This document shows positions 17,698-62,454 of a stretch of DNA of 64,000 nucleotides, piece by piece. Made by a program: the position numbers and the translations under genes. Source of the stretch: Saccostrea cucullata (lineage: Eukaryota). The notes beneath the pieces were generated by a model. The model ran no database searches. It was not told where the DNA came from and saw only the letters and a list, made by a program, of their open reading frames with translations. Where the stretch lies: positions 62,001 to 126,000 of the forward strand of contig NW_026918226.1 of the NCBI RefSeq assembly GCF_032062105.1, read 5' to 3'. The first letter of the stretch is position 1; each line of letters starts with the position of its first letter.

Positions 17698-19080
17698 TTA
17701 TATTGTCAGAATCCTGTCTCTGAAATAACTGATGACTCTGGCATTTAAATTATTGTCATTATAACATCCATAAAGCACATTTTGCATTTCTGGAAAACAG
17801 TATTTTGCCGCCTCAACAAGTCTTGGGTTTTCCTTTTCAAATAAATTATATTTGACGTGAATTTTTGTGAAGTGTGAATCCGGAAAAATTTTACCAAGAT
17901 TTTCATTTCCGAGGAAAAAATCTGGTAAACACTTCTTTTCTAATGATAAGTATACAAATGTCATAAAGTATCCCAATGCCTCACGGACACCTGCAATATG
18001 GAAGCCAGAAGGCACGATGACGGTAGGAATTGTCAGCAGAAGGACGCAGTACATGGCGATAGTTTTTAAATGATATGACGTCAGCAGAATGGCGGCTTGA
18101 TTCGATTGCTCCTTTAGCCTTTTTACCAAGGCTTTCATTATGCGACACGACGTCATGATATAACGCCGCTCTCTGTTCATAAAACAGATATCAAACATGA
18201 ATTTTTCATAGGCAGAAGAGCAATTTCGCCATCTTAATTCTTTGTCTTTTTCACAAATATCGGCGTTCTCTTTATTTATCCATTTCATGAGTCCGAATCT
18301 CGGAAAGTTAATTGCTATGTCACAGGGGGATGAAATAATTGCCCCAGGAATTAAAATCATTTCACTGCCCAACATAAGTGCTGGAACAAAATCGACATAA
18401 ACAGTACTAGGATCTTGAAAGTCAACATTGACTGTCAAATCCATTGTAGGAGGTCTGGATCCTCTTTTAACATGATAAACATGTACTTCGGATGGTCGTC
18501 CGGTTTCCGGTGTCCCTTCTAAACGTTTTGCAGTTGCAAGAAATAATTCATATAATGTTTTATCCATTAGAGATTTAAACACTTGCTCTTGAAGTGCCTT
18601 AGTGTTGAGGAAACATGCGCCATTAACCACTTCAAAAACTCCTTCCCTCTGCAGTCGTGGGAGCATACCGATTTGTTCATCATTCATGACCCGGAGACGT
18701 ATTTGTCCTGGTAGATATTGACCAGCCGTGTCCCACAAATGAACTTCCTGTAGACGAAGCCCTTCAATTTTAAAAGGAACGATGGCATCAAACTCGTCAG
18801 GAGATTCGATTTTCAATCCCTGCCTTGCACTTCCCTGTCGTATAAAATTTCGATCTATTGTCAAGCCTTCGAAATACTTTTCGGCCTGTTTTTGAAGTTC
18901 TGTGAGAATGATTCCTAGAACATCATCTGCGACGAAGCAAGCATTTTCCCAAGCATACTGAGTGAAGTCTATTGGAATGGAAATCTTCCCCAGAACTTGA
19001 GATTTCAAATAAACTTCATAGTCAGGAAATAAATCGTCTGGATAGCGCCATGTATTCGGGAACAGTCCTTCTGACGCCAT
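17698..19080 (-). CDS. Mab21/cGAS-like nucleotidyltransferase (cGLR-type; MiD51/ITPRIP-like C-terminal motif), paralogue 1, 460 aa
   Basis: Pol-beta NTase motif RQGS...PDEFD, third acidic residue in VDFVP, Mab21 helical-lobe motif SYHLKT, LPDFFLGN; single coding exon; 5'UTR acceptor at 19117. Confidence 0.9.
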   Translation of the reverse strand: MASEGLFPNTWRYPDDLFPDYEVYLKSQVLGKISIPIDFTQYAWENACFVADDVLGIILTELQKQAEKYFEGLTIDRNFIRQGSARQGLKIESPDEFDAIVPFKIEGLRLQEVHLWDTAGQYLPGQIRLRVMNDEQIGMLPRLQREGVFEVVNGACFLNTKALQEQVFKSLMDKTLYELFLATAKRLEGTPETGRPSEVHVYHVKRGSRPPTMDLTVNVDFQDPSTVYVDFVPALMLGSEMILIPGAIISSPCDIAINFPRFGLMKWINKENADICEKDKELRWRNCSSAYEKFMFDICFMNRERRYIMTSCRIMKALVKRLKEQSNQAAILLTSYHLKTIAMYCVLLLTIPTVIVPSGFHIAGVREALGYFMTFVYLSLEKKCLPDFFLGNENLGKIFPDSHFTKIHVKYNLFEKENPRLVEAAKYCFPEMQNVLYGCYNDNNLNARVISYFRDRILTI

Positions 19081-34932: not shown

Positions 34933-37900
34933 GCTTTTATAATTTTAAATCATGTCTTCATTTAAATTTTTACATAAGGAAGGTAAAGTTTATATTGACG
35001 ATAGAAATTGAACGCTAACATTTCATTTAAGGGTACTTAACACAAACAAAAAATGGATGCACGGACTGATATATATTTTTTGACTGATTTTGATTTGAAA
35101 TGACATAAATAATAAATCCCTGAAATATAAAGAAATCGTAGGTTTTCCTTGGTGCTAAGATTTGAGACTTTGTTTTGCTTCCTATATAATCCCATACAAA
35201 ATTTTGCAGAAATTTCGAATTTTATGACAAAATCTTATAAATTTCACCCATTTTACTCGGTAAACATCATTCAGGTTGTCAATTTAAATGTAAGTCTATG
35301 AGAAATATTCCTGATTTCTGTAAAAAGTTTGTTTGTGTTATTTATCCTTAAGGACACCTACCCACTATTATACTGGCCAATGAACACAATATCAGGGATA
35401 CAATGATAAGGAATCCAGTGAGCCATTGGTATGATAAAGAATAGAAACGGTCCAAACCTTGCCTGAAAAGATGCAGGTAAACTGTCTTATCAAAATACTT
35501 AATCCACTTTTTTAAATAATGAATACCATTTCAACTATTTGTTTTTTCAGTTACTATTTTCAAGATATCATTAGAATTTATGGGAAAGAAAATTAACCTA
35601 AAAGGACATATTCTGCTCTTTTAAAGTTTATTACGTTATACGTTATTTGCATTAATCACCAAAAAGCTTTGTGAAAATCCCACATAGATTGTGCTCCAAC
35701 CCTTAAATATTATGATACATATGTATTCTATTCCTTATATGAAAAGGTTTTAAAACATAACGTACGGTTTTTGTTGAATCGATGCTGTGAGAAAATCAGT
35801 TGTTGTTTCTGTGGTGTAATAATCTGTCCAAGAAGTGTTCTGCATCATGGTTGTACTCATAACCGTCATATTTGACAGTGACGTCATATCGTAACATTTG
35901 TCTGTTGGTCCTGGTGGCAGTCCCGGAGTACGTTTAAGGGTTGTGGAGAAGTTTTGTCCATTAGTAATCCACAATCCGATAACTGCAGTAAGCAGTGTTC
36001 CTATGATAGCTCCCTGAAATATTTTCGTCAATTTATTGATTTGCCTGTAGGCTAAATACAAGCCCTTCACCATCCGATTGATATTTTCTCTTATATAGAC
36101 CAAATTGTGAATGAAGTTTGAAGTTGAATTTTGAAAGCGTTCCGAGATTTATTTTTAATTTTGCAGACGTCAGCTACAAACCTTTGCATTTCCCCAAGTA
36201 CAAAACACGGAGAAAAGGAATAGTCCAGATGCAGGACCACCAAAGGCAGCAAGAACGCTGAATGTTATCTGTGGAAAATTTTATCAGTCAGAAAAAAGCA
36301 AAAACTATGAAGATATTAATGAGCTGTATCATAACAACAGAATTGTTTTATATATCATGTACCTGCGACATTGGTCCTTTAATCTTTGCTATAAGAAAGG
36401 ACACCCCGACGCAGAGAGCACCAATAACCACAACTATGAAAATATGTCGTCAGAGTTTAATAAACATATTGTTTGATTTGTTAATTCTATTCTGTTCTAT
36501 TTTGTTACATAAAGTGAAAACTTTACCANNNNNNNNNNNNNNNNNNNNNNNNNNNNNNNNNNNNNNNNNNNNNNNNNNNNNNNNNNNNNNNNNNNNNNNN
36601 NNNNNNNNNNNNNNNNNNNNNNNNNNNNNNNNNNNNNNNNNNNNNNNNNNNNNNNNNNNNNNNNNNNNNNNTGTCACCGATCTTTCTGACAAGGACTTAA
36701 ACTTTGGTTTGACGACATCTTCAATGGCTAAAGCTGAGAGACTACTCAACCCCGAGGAAAGTGTACTGAAAGAAGATTTAATTGTCAAACACCATACTAG
36801 AGCTATACTTTACATGTAGCTAAAAGTATGAACTGGACAAAATAATAAATATTTAACCTCAATGATGCGCTGAAAAGGGAGGCCATGAACAGCCCAGCCA
36901 TTCCTGGAGCATCTTTGAAAATCTCTAAAACCATGAATGGCACAACCTGAAATTGTATTTACCATTTCTGAATGACAAAAACTTAAAGATTACGTTCAAA
37001 TTACTGTCTATTTGCATCGTTGCAATGATCTACATCAAAGCTGCTTTAATTTTTTTCGTCCCAATTTTACCTGATTTGGGTTGGAAATTCTTTTGGACTT
37101 GAGAGGATCACAACCAAGGGAGGAAAAGTACGCATAAGCCACGGCTCCCTCTAGAGTGGCCAAAGTGAGGGTAATGAAGAAAGCAGGTCCAGCTAAAAAG
37201 AGCACTCTACGAAAGAGAACCATGGTGTAAACAGCTATTTTTGAACAAAGTATTAAAAATGTACAGACGCGATATGCATCTCGAAGTTTTCTGAGAAAAG
37301 AATTTTACCGAGATGAAGATATATATTCTGCTGCATTTAAAATTGGAAAATGTTTCAAAAAGATAAGTTTAGTACTACATCTTACTGTGATGTTAAATAT
37401 AATATAGACAATAAAAGACAAATGATTTAGATCTACCCACCTATTAGCAGCTTTCTCGGTGGGCGTGGATACAATTCTTTGTACCGAGGTTTGTCCGATG
37501 TTGAGACTCGCCATACGAAGACAACTGCCAATAACAAGGCTCCAAAACGTATGTCGGACTGTAGGATCCGGGTCAAAACTGGAAATAATCAAATATAAAT
37601 TTTCTGTCTTTCATTGCGCTTGCCTGGTATATTTTACAATCATTCTAAAAAACAATGTACCAATAATCAAATATTGTACGTTACATTTTACATGCAGTCA
37701 CTGAAAGTCTGTTTCTTTTCATACATAAAGATTTCCTAATTCATGTAACATTGAAAAAGGACATAAAACTACTGTAAAAAATCATAAAATGAAATATTTA
37801 CTTGAACATATCTAATCTTCCTGTATTTTTGTTAATCTCGATTACATTTGATACGCCACCGGCAACCATTGTGCCCTTCAAAAGAAATTGGACATTAATC

Positions 37901-39591
37901 TGAGTTTAAAATTGGAAATTGGTAAAAAAATTTTACATGTATACCTATTTACATTTTTAATCTTTATCATTGTCTCATCTTGAATGAATTTTAAAAATTA
38001 TAAAAATTAATTATAAAATGAAAATGATAAAATTGAATGATTAGATTCTATCAAAAAAAGAAGCAAGGCCATGCTAGCAATTACTGAGTATACATAAATA
38101 TTATGCATTTTAAGTTAATTAAATACTAACCTTTATAAGAATGGCAAATATACCCATGAACATGACAAGGCTTTGAAATACATCTGTCCATATCACTGCT
38201 TTTATTCCACCCTAATAGACAATTAAGAGAAAGTGAGAACGTGCAAATGTTGCTTGTCATTTGGGTATTTACTTTTCGCCCTCTAAATAAAGAGTGAGGT
38301 ATAAATAATAGATATAATTGGAATAATATTGTGAATAAATGGAGTAAAGATACTTGCACGTACATCTGCATACATGTTTAATAATGAGTACTTACGATGG
38401 ATGTGTATATCACCGAACATACAGCTACTACTAGAGTAGAAGCCCACATAGGAAAGTTTGTCACTGAAACGAGTATCAACTGTGTTATACCATCCAATAT
38501 ACTTTTTGGAAAACTATTCATTAATATGTTGTTTGAATTTCATGAAAAATTTTGTAGAATTACAGTAATGCTGATTGTAGAAATATTCAGAGTGGCGCTC
38601 TTTTTGTACCTGATTCCAGGGCAATACCAGGACCAAACAACACAATGCCCATGTATAAAATCTGAAAAACAGTAACTATTGCCTATTTTAAGACTGATTT
38701 ATCTAGCATTGCTTTACATATGTGTATATAACATAGTAAATTTTATCATTATACTAGACAAGAAGCCATTACAGGTTTCATAATAAATAATACATGCCAC
38801 AATCCTAAAGAAATACAGATGTGAGAGACAAATGAAATGATAATTTTCTTAACGACATTTGTTATTTAAATATTAATGTGCACAAATGTAACGACAAAGA
38901 CTTTTTTTAAAAACCTTCATATTATTTAATTGAAATAAATAGAAAAAAGAGATAAAACTTACGTAATTAATGTACCCTAACGTCAGATTCAGCAACCGCA
39001 CATATCGGCTGTTATATCGTAATTCAAAATACTGCAAAATTATTTATAAAAAATGAAAGGGATGTTCAATGTTTTATAGCTGGTTATGGAATTTATTTCA
39101 CAAGATGGACACCACTTTTTGAATAATTGCGCGAGAGCCAATTTAAGTACGAATTTCTTTTTTCAGTTTTTTAGAGGATAATGTTTATAATTCACCATTA
39201 ATCAGCATAAACATTTTACTTAAAAAAAGGGGAAAAATCAAATTTGATAAACTCCTTTAAATACCTCATTTATGCTGGTAATTCTCAATGGATGTACAAG
39301 TGGCACGACCATGCGGGTAGCCATAATACACGAGGCAAGAAATCCGAAATTAGACAACCAAAACATCATTCCATAAACATAAGTTTCCGCGGGAAATCCT
39401 AACATCATAATGGAGGATTCAAACGAAACCATGAGAGAGATTGCCACGGGTAGAATTTTCATTTGTCGACCTCCGACAAGATATTCGGAGGTGGTTTTCT
39501 GGCCAGCAATGGCATAGTAGACACCAATGCCAAGAGAAATCGCAATAGTAATACAGAAAACAACATAGTCAACAGCTACGAAGCTAGACAT
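34269..39591 (-). CDS. SLC5 sodium:solute symporter (SMCT/SMVT/NIS-like), about 15-16 exons, interrupted by an assembly gap
   Basis: DYVVF...IGVYYA...EYLVGGRQM..LPVAISL, YFELRY, GGIKAVIWTDVFQ, FDPDPTVRHTFWS, SNPNQ, GMAGLFM, LSTLSSGLSSLS, YSLSY motifs on GT-AG-bounded exons; exact orthologue (SLC5A5/6/8/12 group) not assignable. Confidence 0.92.
34891..34932. repeat. (GA)n microsatellite
   Basis: Direct reading. Confidence 0.95.
35031..35347. mobile_element. Small TTAA-flanked MITE (Kolobok-like) in an SLC5 intron
   Basis: Imperfect 20-bp TIRs GGGTACTTAACACAAACAAA / GGATAAATAACACAAACAAA with TTAA on both sides. Confidence 0.65.
36529..36671. other. Assembly gap (143 N)
   Basis: Run of N truncating an SLC5 exon. 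Confidence 1.
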
Positions 39592-49600: not shown

Positions 49601-50378
49601 TAAATGTAAAAATTTATATTTGTTCTTAAGTTTTCCTGTTTCTAACTTATGTGTACGTAAGACATTTTCAAAGACAGACTAACCCACACCGCATATGAGT
49701 ACTTTGGAGAGAACCACGTATTAATATTAATGATCCTTTAGGATATTGTTGTTTACGATAATAGTTAATCAATGCTTGTAATAATAAAATTTTATTTAAG
49801 AAAAACACCGATACATGTGAATTATAATGTTATCCAGTTATAAAACTTTTGAAATATAAGAAACATACTATCACATTTCTATTTTATTTGGAATAAAAAT
49901 ACGATTTAAATTATCTTTTACTGGTTATTTTATTAAATTATTTCCCTTTAAAACTATCAATTCTAAATAATGTGTGTTGAAGTTCAAATTTCCGTTCCAA
50001 ACAAGATATGCCGAATATAACCATATTCGTGAAAGACTTATAATGACGTTTCTTAATGCATGTGGAAGGAAGTCAGTTTTGTCTACCATTTAATGTTTTT
50101 TTCATGAACGATATCATTGTGGTAAATTCACATTAAATTAATAATATTAATATTTTTATTTCATTGAATAGATGCATTGTGAAAAAAAATTACTTAATAG
50201 ATAAATTGAACGAAATATAAAATCATTTTCTGAAAATCTATACGGCAAACATGACATCAAATATATTCCATAAATGTTAACAGAATGGGTGATATGAGTT
50301 TTAAAATAGCCTAACTACGCCTCGCAGATGACAACCACCAACACAATTCAATAATAAAGGTCAATTAGTCCTCTGCTC

Positions 50379-50381
<3 letters not shown>

Positions 50382-50449
<68 letters not shown>
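50382..50449. repeat. (GA)n microsatellite
   Basis: Direct reading. Confidence 0.95.
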
Positions 50450-50453
<4 letters not shown>

Positions 50454-51284
50454 TTTCCAGTCGCCAACACTAAGATCATATATTTTGTTTTAATTGATGT
50501 TTCGAGAGATTTGTGTTGATAGTATTTTAAAATTTCATTATTTTTTTCATTTTTGCATTGAATAAAGAACATGGTTTTCGATTTAAAATGGCTATCATAT
50601 GATACCAGCAAATTTTTTGTTAACACTGATATAATGAGAATGATTAATGATTAAAAAAACAGAACAAATTAAATATCAGTATAGACTTATTTATCTGATC
50701 ATTATCATATTAAAAGAAGGTTTAAACTGCACCTACAATTCGATTTAATTTTATGTTTCAAGTGAACAAAGTTAAATTGTAGGTGTTTCTATTTTCCTGG
50801 TTTTAATACATCAAAAATCCATGCTTAGTGGAGTGATTTTCATAACATTTCACATGAATCATACCATTGCCTAGGATCTTAATACGCAATTTTTTTTATG
50901 TATATTAATTACAATTTGAGTATGAAAGATCGTATAATGTGCTTCATTTGCGGAAAGGGTTTGTAAATTTCAGGATTGAAAAGATATTTTTGTGCAACCT
51001 TAATGAAAACAATATGCTGAGCTACATTCTAGAAAAAATTCACAATAATTTGCACTGCCTTGAATGCCTTTGAATCTCAGTAAAAAATATCTTGTTCAAT
51101 AACATTTGCTCTTTAAGATTACTTCTAGATTAAATGTTAACAAAGCACACGTAAAATTCTTTCCTAAAAACTATGAATAATAAAAATGAAAATCTACTCT
51201 ACAACTGAATTTGTAAGTTTATCACTTCCTATGTAGTTTTTGGAGAGCAGATCTTTTAACAATCTTTTAAAATTCAAACGGTAT

Positions 51285-57122: not shown

Positions 57123-57242
57123 CCACGTGGTCTCGAAAGATAGGAACTTTCCCTAGTTACACTGATAAACTTTGAATGGTATTTTTGCTTTTGAAAATTC
57201 TTCAAAAACTTCTGCTTCCGCTAGTAGAATTTATATATAAAA
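57123..57242 (+). promoter_or_regulatory. Candidate inducible promoter of the cytokine-like gene
   Basis: E-box CCACGTGG 57123-57130, kB-like GGAACTTTCC 57143-57152, TATATAAAA 57234-57242, ATG at 57307. Confidence 0.55.
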
Positions 57243-57306
57243 CGTTTTTTTAAGTAAGAAATTAAAAATCAAGAGTTCAACTTCTACTTCAATTGTAACC
57301 AATTCA

Positions 57307-60188
57307 ATGAAGAGCTCAACAAATATAATGAGTTTGGGTAAGGATGGTATGCAAATATATTTATATACATACTCATAGAACCTATATTCAGAATCGTTTA
57401 CGATATTTTTGGTTCTATTTTTTAAATAGGGACATTAAATAAAAATTTTTCAACATTCAATTTTTACACATAGGAAACACGTTTCTATTCTTGAGTTTTT
57501 CACTGAATATGTTTACATTTTTTGACATCCATGCCATAATTAGTATAACATTAATGACCTGATACATTGGATGTTCAGCAAGTTAGACCATCACGGGTTG
57601 TGACCTCATTAATATCTACAAAATAAATATGCGATTTTCTGAAATCAAAATTACAATAACTGTTTCCAGAGTAAAAATAATGCCTGATTTTTATTATATT
57701 ATTAAAGCGAGTTACAGTAGTATTCATACGAATGCCTTATCTATTTTAAAATAAATATAAAATTCATATGTGCACTTTTTACAAGTCTACTCATTTAGAA
57801 TATTTGTGCTTTTCTTAAATTACACGCATCTTAACATTTATATGATAAGATGATAGATAGTCATTTAAATGTTCAAGATTGATCAAAATCACAGACCAAA
57901 ACTTTAACGTTTCACAGAGGTGTGTTAAGATTTAACCATATAATAATTATATGCAGTTACTCGTCTATTAGTTTTCCATTATTAAAACGTATTCGAAAGC
58001 ACTGAAGAATGAATGCTATTTGTCTCCTTATAGGAAAACCAGTCTACATTACGTAAAGTTTGAAACTCTTTTAATTGGTGCAAATAACGTTTCCGTGCAT
58101 CTTTAAGTTCACTAGAAAAAGATCATTTTCAATAACGCCAAACAATAAAAAACCTTGTATTATTTTTTTTCAAAATTAACAAATTTTGATGAAGGGAAAT
58201 GCAAAACAGGTGCGTCCTTCGGCTGTATTCATTGTTGTCTGATTTGCGTAATTGTTTTGAGAATCTACGTTAACAATCTACATGTAGGAGTATGCATTCT
58301 AATTTCGCTGTGCCAAAAGTCAATAGATTTTCCCGCATAATATAGCAGAACATCTTTGGCTCTCGGCACGTTGTGTAGGCTATTCTGAGTAAAGTAAAAT
58401 TTTATTGTATATATTTACTTATTAGATCATACTTTATGTGAAATCACCGGTTTAATTATAGAAGGGAATAACTTATAAAGCTTGGTATGTAGAATCTTTT
58501 GTCATTTTTCATCCAAAGCAAAAACATGCGGTTAGATTGACAAAAACATGAAAACAATAGTGTACTCAAGCAAATATTGTAAAACAAATTTTCTTCAGGG
58601 TAAGCAATGGAAAATATTTGTATAATAATATTCTGAATAAGTAGATTTTTACAACTCTCAGATTCTTGATCTAATGATACAGAAGAATAACTGGTTTAAT
58701 TTCTTCAACTTCAGAATAACAATCATGTGTCATATCTAACACGAACATGACGAACACAACTTAAATTTCAAAACTGTTAACTTTTCTATGATCACATCAA
58801 TGGCTATATATGGTTTCTAATTAATATCAGCATGAAATTATGATAATCTTACCAAAAACAAAACTTTTGTTGGAGAATCAATGTACTATTAGGCCAGAAA
58901 GAAGATAGGCTTTTATAATTTTCCAGATCGTATCTACTAAAAATTATGATAAGTACAGCAATATTCAAAACAAACTTTATAAAATGACATAGCTTTCAAA
59001 TTCCAATTATATGATATAGTCAGTAAATCACATAAAAAAGTTAGTTATGTCTGCGAAAATCTATAAACTTATGCAAATCATATACAAGTTTACAAGTTTA
59101 GATTTGTTTATATTTTACGCCATTTCAGGATTCCTCTGTTTCGTCTTCCATGTTGTGACGTCAGATCATTTCCATCGATCATGTCCTCAGAAAACACTGT
59201 CCAACTCCTCACAAATCCAGGGCGTCAGCATCTCAGAAAGAGAAGTTATTGAGAGTCTAGAATCAAAGTCAAATAAATTTATCGACGCTGCGAAACAATT
59301 AAAAGAACAATATGTAAGTATTTGTAAAGTCATTTTCTATCATTATAAGCAAGCTTATCGAGGCACAAAAGGAGTATGTTTCGTGTAAGTTGGATGTGCA
59401 GAAGACTGAGGTGTTTAAAACATATTTTTAAGGCACTGAATAATCTTAAGGAATTTTGTCCTTTTTCGTTTCAGTCTTCAGTATCCCTACAGCTGTACTA
59501 AAAATGTCTAAAAAGTACATTTTTTTGTATCGTTATTTTAAAATTTCATCTCATATTACTACATTTGAGGAAGTTTTAGAACGATATATTATCAAAGTTA
59601 CTATTTTTGTTTTACAGATACCGCCAACGGGAAGAAGAATAACAAACACTCACTTAATAGATAGACTATCAGAAGTAGAAATAGACATTTTGCCAACAAC
59701 AAATTTTTCCAAGGCATTTATTCCTTTTACTGTTATTTATTATCAAACAATAAGTTCGATTCTTTCTTTCCTTTTTTCCATTTTATAAACTTTGCATGTG
59801 GATACATGTATAAAATTATATGTCTAATTTTATTTCAAAGGAACAGACTGAATTCTTGAATGAAACTTGGATTGATTTATCTGTTGTTTCCGACTGCTTG
59901 GAACTTGTGAGAAAAGAGGAAGAAGCTCTCAGTTTTGGAGAACTATCACATTACACAAATATGACAACGAATGCCTTATGTGCCATGCGCTTTGATCTTC
60001 ATACAGCATTACATTCATTAGAAATTGGTATGGGAAACCATGCTAGCTACAACGCAAATAGCAGTAGAGTGTGCAGAAGTTTTGTGAACCGTCAAGATAG
60101 GTACTTTAGGGACTTTGTCATTGTAAATCAGTCATTGAAATATATGGAGAGACTTCGTAATTATCTTGCACAAATGGCTGAAGATTAA
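57307..60188 (+). CDS. Secreted long-chain four-helix cytokine-like protein (IL-6/IL-11/Unpaired-like), about 219 aa; exons 57307-57337, 59129-59313, 59618-59713, 59841-60188
   Basis: Signal-peptide-like MKSSTNIMSLGFLCFVFHVVTS; four amphipathic helical segments, LP motif in the putative AB loop, R..RDFVI in the last helix; intron phases 1-0-0; AU-rich 3'UTR. The third intron requires a GC donor or an alternative GT at 59675. Confidence 0.65.
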
Positions 60189-62454
60189 ATTTAGCATAGT
60201 ACAAACTTATGAGAAGCATTGCCTGACTTGATAACAAACAATACACCTCATTTCAATGGTTGTCATAAAAATATTTAGTTGTATATTTACAAGCTCTTTT
60301 TAAAACATTGTTCATGATTTTATTTCTCATTAGATTAATCTATTTTATATCACTATTTTACAAAAAATACGTGTTTTTTTTCATATTATCAGTTTTGTAA
60401 ACCCAAAAGCCGATGTACATAAGTTTTATTGTTATTTTTTTTTATTCAAAATGCCAGTATATAATTCTCAGAAAGTATTTCACCGTTGTAATGATTTTAT
60501 AAACGTTTTAAAAATATATTTTATACTTTGAATTTTCTATTATTTATTGATGTCAGATTTTATTTATTATGCACTTACTTAACAAACATATCAATATTTA
60601 TGTGAAGCATTCGTAAATCTTTTGCATTATCTTAACAATAAATATTTTGCATTTGGGTGTTTTATGCTGCTTTCTTAACGTAAAATAATACAAATATATT
60701 ATAAAGCTTGATAAACATGCATTTTCTAAAGATTTGTGGTGCCAAAGAATGGTAATGGTTATGTTATATCTCATTACGTACAACAGGATTCTTTAAATAC
60801 GTATTGGTCTAACGAGTGCATAACAAAATTGATACATGAAATTCTTTTTAAAGCTAATTTTATACAAAAAATAGTTATTCATGTTATTGCAAGATTCTAG
60901 ATTCTTTATGCATTTATTTGATGTTCATATATTCAACTGCATTTAGATTCGGGTTTATGATACATCTATACACATTTTGAACACCTTTTCCACGTTATTA
61001 AAAAAAATGTAACATTTCTAAGACTTTCAACACTTTGCAAATACAATTTTAAATATTTAGAGAATGTAGATGAACATAAATCTAAAAGAAAAATACTTAT
61101 TCCTGAAAAAAATTTACTGTTTGCTGCTTTTCAATTAAACCATAAACATATTTGTTCAAGGTAGTTAAGAGTCTAAATTAATAGGCAATAATTATATGGA
61201 AGATGGTGTAATAACCTCTATGTATATAAGCCAAATACTCCAAATTTTTCCAAAGAAAAAAAAATGAAGCAAACGGAAGTATACCCTTCTCTTCTATGTA
61301 AATAAGAAATAAGTTCTGTGTGTTCTTCTTTTTTTTAATAAGAAGGAAATTTCTTGTGTGACGTTTTCACTGAGGATTTTAATTATCCATACAAGTAAAC
61401 AGGATTTGTAAGAAGAATAAATTCAAGAAGATGATGCCATAAAGTTTCAGGTAGTTGAAAAGCCCATATACCTTATATTCTTGCCAAATCCTATGACCAA
61501 TTTAATATCGATTGTTTTGAAAAGATTATTATGCTTGAGTTAATATACATGTACATTTACTGAGACATAAGTTTGGATAATCGTGCTGATTGAGATACAG
61601 ATTACCCGGAGATGATCAAATTACAGCTACTTGAATTGTATATTGAACAGATATGAGAAATTTGAAGAAAAATATATTTTCGTATACGTTATAAAATAGC
61701 TAATTATGGAAAGCCATAGGAGACCTCCAGGGTCAGGTATTCCTATAAATTTCCATAGCTAATTGGTAAGTTCGTCATGATAAGTTTCTGCAAAATTATT
61801 ACAACAATAATTTCTTACAGAATAGCTTAAAGTCATTAGGAATCATTGAAAAAATATCCTCTCATTTCTTTCACGGCAAACCAAAATTACCCCGTTTGAA
61901 ACGTTTTCGTCTCCAGCTATTGAGTGTGGTAAGATTTAACTTGTAATATTCAAAATTCCAATATTTTCCTCCTACTATCATAAATATATATGCGCATAAA
62001 AAAATCTAAAAAATATATTTGTTTGTTGAATTTTTCACTCATATTAAGACGCAATCATTTGTCGATGAAGGGCTATGTACTCACACCCATTGAGCAGTGA
62101 GGAATCTTTTTAATTCCAGCACCTACTGCGACTCGAGACCTCGGCTTATAAGTCTCTTTTATGTTCTTTTAAATGCAATTTCTTTTGAAATAAGGTATTG
62201 CTTAAATGAAATGTTAAAACTTAATTAAATTGAAACCATCATTTATTTATAATATTTGAAGTCTAGGAAATTTTTGATAAATTTGAATTAAATTTGAAGT
62301 ACAATAAATATGAGGAAAAAATCCTTTAGGGTAGAGCAGAGCAGGGGCATTATTCCAATATTATATGGTGTGTCCAAAATAGTATGTGTCCTAAGGAAGG
62401 CGTTAATTTTAAGACTGTAAGGAATTTCCATCCTCCTATAATGTCATAGGTTTT

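What the first reader, a model, noticed from the sequence alone, without database searches (positions are those of the whole stretch)
57123..60600. Probable invertebrate IL-6-family cytokine missed by the ORF track
Seen: four exons assemble to about 219 aa with a signal peptide; a tiny first coding exon with phase-1 then phase-0 introns; helical segments EREVIESLESKSNKFIDAAKQLKEQY, EQTEFLNETWIDLSVVSDCLELVRKEEE, ELSHYTNMTTNALCAMRFDLHTALHSL and RQDRYFRDFVIVNQSLKYMERLRNYL; kB-like site plus TATA; many ATTTA motifs in the 3'UTR. Established: this exon-phase pattern and regulatory layout typify class-I helical cytokine genes, which diverge too fast for BLAST. Inference: a candidate JAK/STAT ligand in a mollusc, 25 kb from cGLR sensors.
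Basis: partly seen in the sequence, partly recalled or inferred. Interest (0 to 1): 0.75.

Follow-up and report, generated by a model that had tools for sequence, protein, structure and literature searches.

The report
Oyster four-helix cytokine-like gene family
This stretch of hooded-oyster DNA holds a small split gene whose predicted protein folds like the vertebrate IL-6/LIF/IL-11 group of signalling proteins, so it is a candidate for the missing messenger of a mollusc immune signalling pathway, although nothing yet shows that it is made or what it binds.

Summary
Window 57307-60188 (+) of Saccostrea cucullata holds a 4-exon gene. RefSeq already annotates it as 'uncharacterized protein LOC134259610' (222 aa, P0031).

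Evidence for a real, selected gene:
- It belongs to a tandem family with 17 terminal-exon loci on 8 contigs. That count includes haplotigs.
- It has homologues of 32-35% identity in Crassostrea gigas and C. angulata.
- dN/dS against its paralogs is 0.41-0.53.

Sequence methods see no known family (Pfam, PDB profile). AlphaFold2 models of the oyster protein and of its C. gigas homologue both give four long helices joined by long AB, short BC and long CD loops. An all-against-PDB structural search puts IL-11, LIF, IL-6, OSM, CLCF1, CNTF and IL-27 p28 first (Z 17.1-14.8 and 14.9-12.5). The first non-cytokine scores Z 8.9.

The conserved sequence blocks lie where gp130-family cytokines carry their site 3 receptor epitope.

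Not shown: transcription, splicing, secretion, receptor binding. No RNA run was listed.

Weak points:
- The exon 1 region is absent from paralogs B and C.
- The exon 3 donor is GC.
- The ATTTA motifs and the kB-like site are no more frequent than chance.

The parts
57143..57152 (+). kB-like decamer GGAACTTTCC, about 80 nt upstream of the TATA-like run
   Evidence: It is one of 4 GGRRNNYYCC matches in the window (3.93 expected by chance). Function is not shown.
57232..57242 (+). TATA-like run (TATATATAAAA), 65-85 nt upstream of the two candidate start codons
   Evidence: Read directly. It lies in 69-72% A+T DNA, so it is weak evidence on its own.
57307..57346 (+). Exon 1 coding part. RefSeq's version is ATG 57328 to 57346 (donor G|GTATGC). 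Both leave phase 1, and both complete a Gly codon with the first two bases of exon 2.
   Evidence: P0031 starts MSLGKDG then FLCF. The region has no counterpart upstream of paralogs B and C, and no transcript check was possible.
59129..59313 (+). Exon 2. It encodes the rest of the signal-like hydrophobic stretch, the N-terminal Cys (CPQK) and helix A. It ends ...KEQY|GTAAGT in phase 0.
   Evidence: Acceptor and donor are conserved in paralogs B and C, and identity to paralog B is 93% nt with no indel. Distant paralogs D and E end this exon at the same ...Y|V(GT) point.
59618..59713 (+). Exon 3. It encodes the AB crossover loop with the conserved IPPxGRRIT block and a short helix. Its donor is GC in this copy (AAG|GCATTT).
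   Evidence: Paralogs B and C have GAG|GTATTT at the same position.
59841..60188 (+). Exon 4 with stop codon. It encodes helices B, C and D, the BC loop and the CD loop. It follows the canonical AG at 59839-40. RefSeq's model starts this exon at 59820, which adds MSNFISK.
   Evidence: The exon is 100% open. Identity to paralog B is 91% nt and 84% aa with no indel.
60189..60660 (+). Probable 3'UTR with AATAAA at 60637-60642. It holds 6 ATTTA motifs, 3 of them within TATTTAT.
   Evidence: The ATTTA count is not above its own composition (4.4 +/- 2.1 expected). The end of the transcript is inferred from the AATAAA only.

Best explanation
The locus encodes a secreted, N-glycosylated protein of about 200 mature residues. 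It has the long-chain four-helix-bundle fold (up-up-down-down) of the class I helical cytokines and most resembles the gp130-type group (IL-11, LIF, IL-6, OSM, CLCF1, CNTF, IL-27 p28).

It is copy A of a fast-evolving, tandemly duplicated gene family that sequence searches find only in oysters.

The most likely mode of action is that of a cytokine. Inferred steps: the hydrophobic N-terminus directs secretion. The bundle then bridges receptor chains of the class I cytokine-receptor type (gp130/Domeless/IL6R-like), which molluscs are reported to have together with JAK and STAT. Receptor contact would run through the family's conserved tip, made of the end of helix A and start of the AB loop, the end of helix B with the BC loop, and the start of helix D. 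That tip is the topological equivalent of site 3 of gp130 cytokines.

Shown here: gene structure, family, selection, predicted fold, and the position of the conserved blocks along the chain. Inferred: secretion, receptor class, signalling, and any immune role.
For: Gene and family:
- RefSeq protein P0031 (222 aa, LOC134259610) lies on the window's own contig.
- Paralogs on C20427 and C12610 and more distant copies give 26 exon-level profile matches. That is 17 terminal-exon loci on 8 contigs, 6 of them in one orientation on C20427.
- Distant paralogs D and E keep the same exon boundaries.
- C. gigas and C. angulata homologues are 32-35% identical.
- dN/dS is 0.41 (p 0.003) and 0.53 (p 0.034). 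Exons 2 and 4 are 87-93% identical without frame-breaking indels, except the 11-bp deletion of paralog C. Introns and flanks are 70-87% identical with many indels.

Fold:
- AF2 of P0031 gives pLDDT 72.1 and pTM 0.73, with helices 43-66, 107-137, 143-166 and 191-221 and short helices in the AB and CD loops.
- AF2 of C. gigas P0002 gives pLDDT 66.5 and pTM 0.69 with the same layout.
- VIA-align against 48,161 PDB representatives ranks IL-11 at Z 17.1 (163 aligned of 165, rmsd 3.0), LIF 16.2, IL-6 15.7, OSM 15.6, CLCF1 15.6, placental lactogen 15.2, CNTF 14.9 and IL-27 p28 14.8. The first 25 rows are all helical cytokines. The first non-cytokine is at Z 8.9 and covers half the model.
- The P0002 model gives the same order: IL-11 14.9, CLCF1 14.6, IL-6 14.3, LIF 13.7, OSM 13.1, CNTF 13.0.
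- In Foldseek, 41 of the 45 rows shown are helical cytokines or hormones, with TM up to 0.73 by target.
- ESM Atlas feature neighbours of both proteins are all long-chain cytokine clusters (score 0.95 and 0.94, 218 and 217 of 256 features shared).

Conserved blocks:
- The blocks are 65-77, 134-143 and 190-202 of P0031.

Other:
- P0031 has six N-x-S/T sequons.
- Molluscs are reported to have IL6R-like, JAK and STAT genes without a known ligand (PMC13203501, passages read).
Against: - No sequence-level link to any cytokine family exists. Pfam gives nothing over cut-off for 3 exon pieces and 4 full-length proteins. A PDB profile search has best E 0.65 and no cytokine. The Pfam IL6 model on the whole genome gives 2 matches at E above 6.
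- Foldseek E-values are all above 0.001 (best 0.077).
- The models rest on a shallow alignment of 16 rows, 11 of them covering only the C-terminal part, and both models share those rows. The loops and the first 34-38 residues are low-confidence.
- Helical models can reach best Z of about 14 without true kinship (tool note).
- No transcript evidence could be obtained. The exon 3 donor is GC, and RefSeq's exon 3/4 junction is non-canonical.
- Exon 1 and its promoter are not shared with paralogs B and C.
- The FXXK motif and the Trp anchor are not present as such. The family has R-[YF]-[FY]-R-D-F instead.
- No receptor was identified here. The IL6Ra-bind search was uninformative.
Confidence: 0.6

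Rival explanations
1. It is a helical cytokine of another kind: an interferon-like (class II) antiviral cytokine, or a growth-hormone/leptin-like hormone. In that case it would signal through a different receptor class from gp130-type receptors.
For: - Type I interferons and placental lactogen also score high against the P0031 model: fish IFNa Z 13.6, IFN-beta 13.1, placental lactogen 15.2.
- Hormone_1 clusters top the Atlas feature list.
- Oysters are reported to have an IFN-like protein, CgIFNLP, induced through cGAS/STING (PMC8218723, passages read).
- Two Mab-21 (cGAS-like) ORFs lie 25-40 kb away.
Against: - gp130-type cytokines rank first in both models. With the C. gigas model the gap widens: IL-11 14.9 against IFN 9.5 and growth hormone 9.2.
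CgIFNLP therefore appears to be a different gene.
- The Mab-21 genes are separated from this gene by a retrotransposon and a transporter gene.
Confidence: 0.15
2. It is a secreted helical-bundle protein with no signalling role, for example a haemolymph or matrix protein. The cytokine-like topology would then be convergent or an artefact of modelling from a thin alignment.
For: - No sequence homology to cytokines was found.
- Foldseek gives no E <= 0.001.
- Helical models often reach Z of about 14 by arrangement alone (note).
- All ten top Atlas hits sharing one clan also happens for a third of shuffled proteins (note).
Against: - The loop pattern (40-residue AB, 5-residue BC, 24-residue CD) fixes the up-up-down-down connectivity. 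That connectivity is rare outside cytokines.
- Non-cytokine bundles (COQ7, Dps, ferritin) align to only half of the model at Z <= 8.9.
- Z 17.1 with 163 of 165 residues aligned stands well above the rows below it.
- The conserved blocks lie at one tip rather than along the hydrophobic core only.
Confidence: 0.17
3. The window copy is a decaying or non-expressed member of a birth-and-death family. Other copies would work, and this one would be mis-spliced or silent.
For: - The exon 3 donor is GT in paralogs B and C but GC here and in the 99% haplotig.
- RefSeq's exon 3/4 junction for this copy is non-canonical.
- Paralog C carries an 11-bp deletion in exon 4 and is annotated as a truncated 149-aa protein.
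- Exon 1 of this copy has no counterpart in B and C.
- No RNA run was listed.
Against: - All four coding pieces are open and in compatible phases.
- GC-AG introns are used by spliceosomes (recalled knowledge).
- dN/dS against B is 0.41.
- RefSeq models it as a full-length protein without a low-quality flag in the name shown.
Confidence: 0.08

Closest known systems
gp130-type long-chain class I helical cytokines (IL-6, IL-11, LIF, OSM, CNTF, CLCF1, IL-27 p28)
   Same: - The predicted fold and connectivity match over nearly the full length of the solved chains (Z 17.1-14.8).
- Like IL-6, the model has a short extra helix in the CD loop (PMC7378365, passage read).
- The size is about 200 residues, with a signal-like N-terminus.
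- One intron sits in the signal-peptide region and the others in the helical domain, as described for IL-6 genes (PMC13081863, passage read).
- The conserved residues lie on the site 3 elements (PMC10022904).
   Different: - No detectable sequence similarity.
- 4 exons instead of the 5 of IL-6.
- No FXXK or Trp anchor. The family has R-[YF]-[FY]-R-D-F at the start of helix D.
- A different cysteine pattern (C25, C126, C154, C185, of which only the first and last look conserved in Crassostrea).
- A lineage-restricted tandem family.
- Receptor and signalling are unknown.
Drosophila Unpaired (Upd1-3), ligands of Domeless
   Same: They are invertebrate, secreted, glycosylated helical ligands of a gp130-like receptor. 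They were also recognised by fold and function rather than by sequence (PMC7378365 passage; otherwise recalled). An arthropod cluster without a Pfam family is among the Atlas feature neighbours.
   Different: No Upd sequence was available to compare, so similarity was not tested. Upd proteins are about twice as long (recalled).
CgIFNLP, the interferon-like protein of Crassostrea gigas
   Same: It is an oyster helical-cytokine-like protein of low similarity to vertebrate cytokines. It is reported to bind a cytokine-receptor-like protein and to act on JAK/STAT reporters (PMC8218723 and PMC9756803, passages read).
   Different: - It is described as about 15 kDa with an IFN domain and a class II-like structure.
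- Its published primer pair encodes no 5-residue word found in this family.
- Its sequence itself was not available, so non-identity with every paralog is not proven.

Membership tests
IL-6 / gp130 family of long-chain class I helical cytokines | Four long helices in up-up-down-down order with long AB and CD crossover loops and a short BC loop | tested here: met
   AF2 models of P0031 and P0002. VIA-align top rows are IL-11, LIF, IL-6, OSM, CLCF1 and CNTF at Z 17.1-13.0 over nearly full length. These are predicted models, not solved structures.
IL-6 / gp130 family of long-chain class I helical cytokines | Match to the family's sequence profiles (Pfam IL6, LIF_OSM, CNTF, IL11 and relatives) | tested here: not met
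   No such family appears at E <= 10 for 3 exon pieces or 4 full-length proteins. The PDB profile search gives no cytokine. The Pfam IL6 model on the genome gives nothing over cut-off.
IL-6 / gp130 family of long-chain class I helical cytokines | Aromatic anchor at the N terminus of helix D (FXXK in the LIFR binders, Trp in the gp130-D1 binders) within a site 3 made of AB-loop start, helix B end, BC loop and helix D start | tested here: inconclusive
   The family's conserved blocks sit on exactly these elements, and helix D starts with conserved R-[YF]-[FY]-R-D-F. Neither FXXK nor Trp is present. Spatial clustering is inferred from topology, because model coordinates could not be inspected. 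The definition comes from PMC10022904.
IL-6 / gp130 family of long-chain class I helical cytokines | [quoted passage not shown] | tested here: inconclusive
   Phases 1, 0, 0 with 4 exons. IL-6 genes have 5 exons and 4 introns, one of them in the signal peptide (PMC13081863). The phase series 1-0-0-0 for IL-6, GH, EPO and LIF is recalled, not checked. Exon 1 is unverified and not shared with the paralogs.
IL-6 / gp130 family of long-chain class I helical cytokines | Secretion through an N-terminal signal peptide | tested here: inconclusive
   A hydrophobic stretch FLCFVFHVV followed by V-T-S is conserved in the family. Six N-glycosylation sequons are present. No signal-peptide predictor was on hand, and the true N-terminus is uncertain.
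IL-6 / gp130 family of long-chain class I helical cytokines | Binding to gp130/LIFR-type receptors and activation of JAK/STAT | not testable with these tools
   This needs binding and signalling assays. The IL6Ra-bind Pfam search of the genome rang nowhere, controls included, so it says nothing.
Type I interferon / class II helical cytokines | Best structural match to interferons (five-helix arrangement) | tested here: not met
   Interferons score below the gp130 group in both models: 13.6 against 17.1, and 9.5 against 14.9.
CgIFNLP (oyster interferon-like protein) | Identity or close similarity to the published CgIFNLP gene | tested here: not met
   The 12 reading frames of the two published qPCR primers share no 5-residue word with any stored family protein.

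The most novel reading that the evidence does not exclude
This oyster family would be the long-sought endogenous ligand set of the molluscan gp130/IL6R-like receptor-JAK-STAT module. It would also be a true, deeply diverged homologue of the vertebrate IL-6/LIF/CNTF group. Long-chain gp130-type cytokines, with their signal-peptide intron and a site 3-type receptor tip, would then predate the split of protostomes and deuterostomes rather than being a vertebrate invention.
Probability: 0.25. Interest if true: 0.85.

Novelty: new member of a known kind. Interest (0 to 1): 0.66.

Why it matters
A 2026 survey found IL6R-like, JAK and STAT genes together in molluscs but no IL-6-type ligand in any invertebrate. 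It suggested that other ligands must exist (PMC13203501, passages read). In my searches, no held paper contains both 'IL-6-like' and 'Crassostrea', and none contains the C. gigas locus name LOC105334490.

A family of secreted oyster proteins whose predicted fold is closest to IL-11, LIF and IL-6 gives named candidates, with coordinates and accessions, that can be expressed and tested on oyster receptors and haemocytes. Oysters are farmed animals with large losses to viral and bacterial disease, so a handle on their cytokine signalling has practical value.

The case also shows that fold-level and language-model searches recover cytokines that sequence profiles miss.

Tried and rejected
Steps that led nowhere:
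- Sequence links to cytokines: Pfam on exon pieces and full-length proteins, a PDB profile search and the Pfam IL6 model on the whole genome gave nothing.
- The IL6Ra-bind model for a receptor found nothing and rang in no control either, so it is uninformative.
- P0003, a 1419-aa repetitive protein with E 1e-6, was dropped as a spurious match to a repeat. It was used in no alignment.
- The alternative start (TATAAAA at 58978-58984 with an in-frame ATG at 59047) was considered. The TATA reads TAGAAAA in paralogs B and C, and the equivalent ATGs are out of frame in B. It is not preferred, but it is not excluded for this copy.
- The ARE and kB arguments were rejected as evidence.
- I could not obtain a source for the intron-phase series of class I cytokine genes. 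The paper I recalled was not held and the last literature search found none. The phase series is therefore marked as recalled.
- No vertebrate cytokine or Upd sequences were on hand, so no profile-profile comparison was made.
- The primer table of PMC8218723 is in a supplement, and supplements are closed, so I did not ask for it. It might have given more CgIFNLP sequence.
- The scan's own index had no note under the words cytokine/helical/four-helix.

Full report
**What is in the sequence**

- An ATG at 57307, and a second in-frame ATG at 57328, are followed by G|GTAAGG at 57337/8.
- An acceptor TTTCAG|GA lies at 59128/9.
- Exon 2 is 59129-59313 and ends KEQY|GTAAGT.
- Exon 3 is 59618-59713.
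- Exon 4 runs from the AG at 59839-40 to the stop at 60186-60188.
- The intron phases are 1, 0, 0, and the sum is 219 aa.

The three larger pieces lie in three different frames. They show up as separate ORFs of 113, 110 and 122 aa, which is why no single ORF represents the gene.

The donor of exon 3 is GC (AAG|GCATTT).

**Identity of the genome and of the gene**

Earlier notes of the scan call the genome the hooded oyster. Cluster look-ups name Saccostrea cucullata.

An exhaustive HMMER search with exon 4 found 5 proteins at E <= 0.001 among 1.84 billion. Four belong to this family. I dropped the fifth (P0003, a 1419-aa repetitive protein) as spurious.

Through the paralog P0001, a word-indexed search returned P0031. 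This is 'uncharacterized protein LOC134259610 [Saccostrea cucullata]', 222 aa, on a contig of 136,115 bases, which is the window's contig C363. The gene is therefore already annotated, without a function.

It differs twice.
- It starts at ATG 57328 and uses the donor G|GTATGC after 57346. That donor also leaves phase 1 and joins the same acceptor.
- It has seven extra residues, MSNFISK, encoded at 59820-59840, between exon 3 and exon 4. The skipped stretch 59714-59819 would begin GC and end AT, which is not a canonical intron.

I cannot tell which junction this copy uses.

**Transcripts**

Expression and splicing therefore remain unchecked.

**Family and selection**

Exon-wise searches of the assembly and a profile search (26 matches at E <= 0.01) show the following.
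- There are 17 loci with a terminal exon of this family on 8 contigs. Some are haplotigs.
- C12610 carries a 98.6-99% copy of the window locus, followed 15 kb on by copy B.
- C20427 carries six copies in one orientation, at 110.6, 91.5, 68.9, 41.0, 27.5 and 7.7 kb.

The window gene is thus copy A of a tandem array.

A multiple alignment of A, its haplotig, B and C gives these points.
- All acceptors and the exon 2 donor are conserved.
- B and C have GT where A has the GC donor.
- C has an 11-bp deletion in exon 4, which explains its truncated 149-aa RefSeq protein.

The distant copies D (43% identical in exon 4) and E (25%) keep the same boundaries. Their exon 2 ends ...Y|V(GT), and D has an exon 3 that starts IPPKGKRIT.

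Between A and B, conservation differs by region.
- Exons 2 and 4 are 93% and 91% identical with no indel.
- Introns, the upstream flank and the 3'UTR are 76-87% identical with 2-46 gap positions.
- dN/dS is 0.41 for A-B (21 of 128 synonymous against 36 of 487 non-synonymous sites changed, p 0.003). It is 0.53 for A-C (p 0.034).

Outside S. cucullata, the only named relatives are C. gigas and C. angulata proteins of 225-245 aa, 32-35% identical. Two further database searches found only oyster or unnamed fragments: 3 of 102 candidates and 9 of 2290 candidates.

This is a real, moderately constrained, fast-evolving gene family that sequence searches find only in oysters.

**The 5' end is the weakest part**

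DNA shared with paralogs B and C starts only at about 58346.
- RefSeq starts paralog C at an ATG directly upstream of the exon 2 acceptor.
- In the window copy an in-frame ATG at 59047 lies 63 nt after a TATAAAA at 58978-58984. That TATA reads TAGAAAA in B and C.
- In B the corresponding ATGs are out of frame, so B needs an upstream exon that I could not find.

A spliced first exon is therefore likely for the family, and RefSeq models one here. Its exact start and donor are unsettled.

**Regulatory motifs**

- The 3'UTR has 6 ATTTA in 462 nt, or 13 per kb against 4.2 per kb in the window. It is 77% A+T, and a first-order Markov model of it gives 4.4 +/- 2.1, with 28.5% of simulations reaching 6.
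- The kB-like pattern occurs 4 times in 64 kb against 3.93 expected. One of the four sits about 80 nt upstream of the TATA-like run. That placement is suggestive at most and was chosen after the fact.

**Fold**

Pfam finds nothing over cut-off in the exon pieces or in four full-length proteins. A family profile finds no cytokine among PDB sequences.

I folded RefSeq's P0031 with a 16-row alignment (A2). Eleven of the rows cover only the C-terminal part.
- The result has pLDDT 72.1 and pTM 0.73.
- The helices are 43-66, 107-137, 143-166 and 191-221, with short helices at 79-86 and 179-184 and a disordered 1-34.
- The loop lengths (40, 5 and 24 residues) impose the up-up-down-down connectivity. 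PMC7378365 describes that connectivity as the mark of helical cytokines, along with a short CD-loop helix in IL-6 (passages read).

Foldseek gave no E <= 0.001 (best 0.077). Even so, 41 of the 45 rows shown are CNTF, prolactin, G-CSF, IL-6, GH, LIF, IL-11, CLCF1, IFN-beta or IL-27, with TM by target up to 0.73.

The Foldseek-independent search of 48,161 representatives gave the following.

| PDB match | Z |
|---|---|
| IL-11 (163 aligned of 165, rmsd 3.0) | 17.1 |
| LIF | 16.2 |
| IL-6 | 15.7 |
| OSM | 15.6 |
| CLCF1 | 15.6 |
| placental lactogen | 15.2 |
| CNTF | 14.9 |
| IL-27 p28 | 14.8 |
| interferons | 13.6-12.0 |

The first 25 rows are all helical cytokines. The first other protein scores Z 8.9 and covers only residues 105-222.

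A second model, of C. gigas P0002 (pLDDT 66.5, pTM 0.69, same helix layout), gave the same order: IL-11 14.9, CLCF1 14.6, IL-6 14.3, LIF 13.7, OSM 13.1, CNTF 13.0, interferons 9.5. The two models share their alignment rows, so they are not fully independent.

The ESM Atlas feature search returned only long-chain cytokine clusters for both proteins (0.95 and 0.94; 218 and 217 of 256 features). Among them are a mollusc cluster of 114 proteins in which 11% carry Pfam IL6, and an arthropod cluster without a family. The Atlas's own structure search of its own model gave nothing above TM 0.43, which counts mildly against.

**Where the conservation lies**

Mapped on P0031, the conserved blocks are:
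- KEQYIPPxGRRIT (65-77), at the end of helix A and start of the AB loop;
- [DE]E..[FY]SxGEL (134-143), at the end of helix B, the BC loop and the start of helix C;
- FDLHT (158-162), in helix C;
- NRQxR[YF][FY]RDFVI (190-201), at the start of helix D.

By topology, three of the four blocks meet at one tip of the bundle. [quoted passage not shown] Its anchor is an FXXK or Trp at the start of helix D (passages read).

The oyster family has conserved aromatics there but not that motif. I could not inspect model coordinates, so the spatial clustering is an inference.

P0031 has six N-x-S/T sequons and four cysteines after the signal-like stretch.

**Comparison with what is known**

- PMC13203501 (2026, passages read) reports IL6R-like, JAK and STAT genes in Mollusca and no IL-6 ligand in any invertebrate.
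- CgIFNLP, the oyster interferon-like protein, is about 15 kDa and described as class II-like. The peptides encoded by its published primers match nothing in this family.
- Searches for LOC105334490 (0 papers) and for 'IL-6-like' with 'Crassostrea' (0 papers) were empty.
- Six broader searches showed no description of such a family among the 12-20 papers each listed. Each search matched from 17 to several hundred thousand papers, so this is not proof of absence.

**Surroundings**

Two intronless Mab-21 ORFs lie at 17698-19080 and 30588-31922 on the minus strand. Their Pfam scores are 25.5 and 24.0 bits against a cut-off of 24.1. They flank a retrotransposon. A sodium:solute symporter exon lies at 39238-39591. 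The cytokine-like gene is therefore not adjacent to the cGLR-like genes.

**Verdict**

The fold inference is supported by two models and three kinds of search. The family is uncharacterised in the sources I could reach. Family membership in the strict sense, expression and function remain open.

Noticed in passing
window 59714-59840: RefSeq's protein for this gene joins exon 3 (end 59713) to 59820. The implied intron begins GC and ends AT. The canonical AG acceptor shared by the paralogs is 21 nt further on (59839-40).
   Followed up: partly
L018 3938-4501 (G000:C12610:23938-24501) and G000:C20427:110578-111138: In paralog B, exon 3, intron 3 and exon 4 form one uninterrupted open frame of 221-237 aa. 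Retaining that intron would therefore keep the frame.
   Followed up: no
L020 (G000:C20427:91322-91649, minus strand): Paralog C has an 11-bp deletion in exon 4 and is annotated as a truncated 149-aa protein (P0001). This is a sign of gene birth and death in the array.
   Followed up: partly
window 17698-19080 (-) and 30588-31922 (-): Two intronless ORFs of 460 and 444 aa give weak Pfam Mab-21 (cGAS-like nucleotidyltransferase) matches at the cut-off (25.5 and 24.0 bits against 24.1). They flank the DIRS-like retrotransposon noted earlier by the scan.
   Followed up: partly
window 35750-39591 (-): Exons of a sodium:solute symporter (Pfam SSF, E 1.6e-6 for 39241-39591) lie between the Mab-21 genes and the cytokine-like gene. 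A run of 143 N lies near 36.5 kb and was left as it is.
   Followed up: no
window 50348-50626 (-): A dinucleotide microsatellite reads as a run of Ser-Leu repeats in one ORF.
   Followed up: no
window 58978-59047: A TATAAAA lies 63 nt before an ATG that is in frame with exon 2. This is a possible unspliced alternative start for this copy only, because the TATA reads TAGAAAA in paralogs B and C.
   Followed up: partly
ESM Atlas neighbour lists: A cluster of 114 mostly molluscan proteins of about 229 aa has Pfam IL6 in 11% of members. An arthropod cluster of 56 proteins of about 230 aa has no family. Both are among the nearest neighbours, so there may be wider invertebrate families of long-chain cytokine-like proteins.
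   Followed up: no
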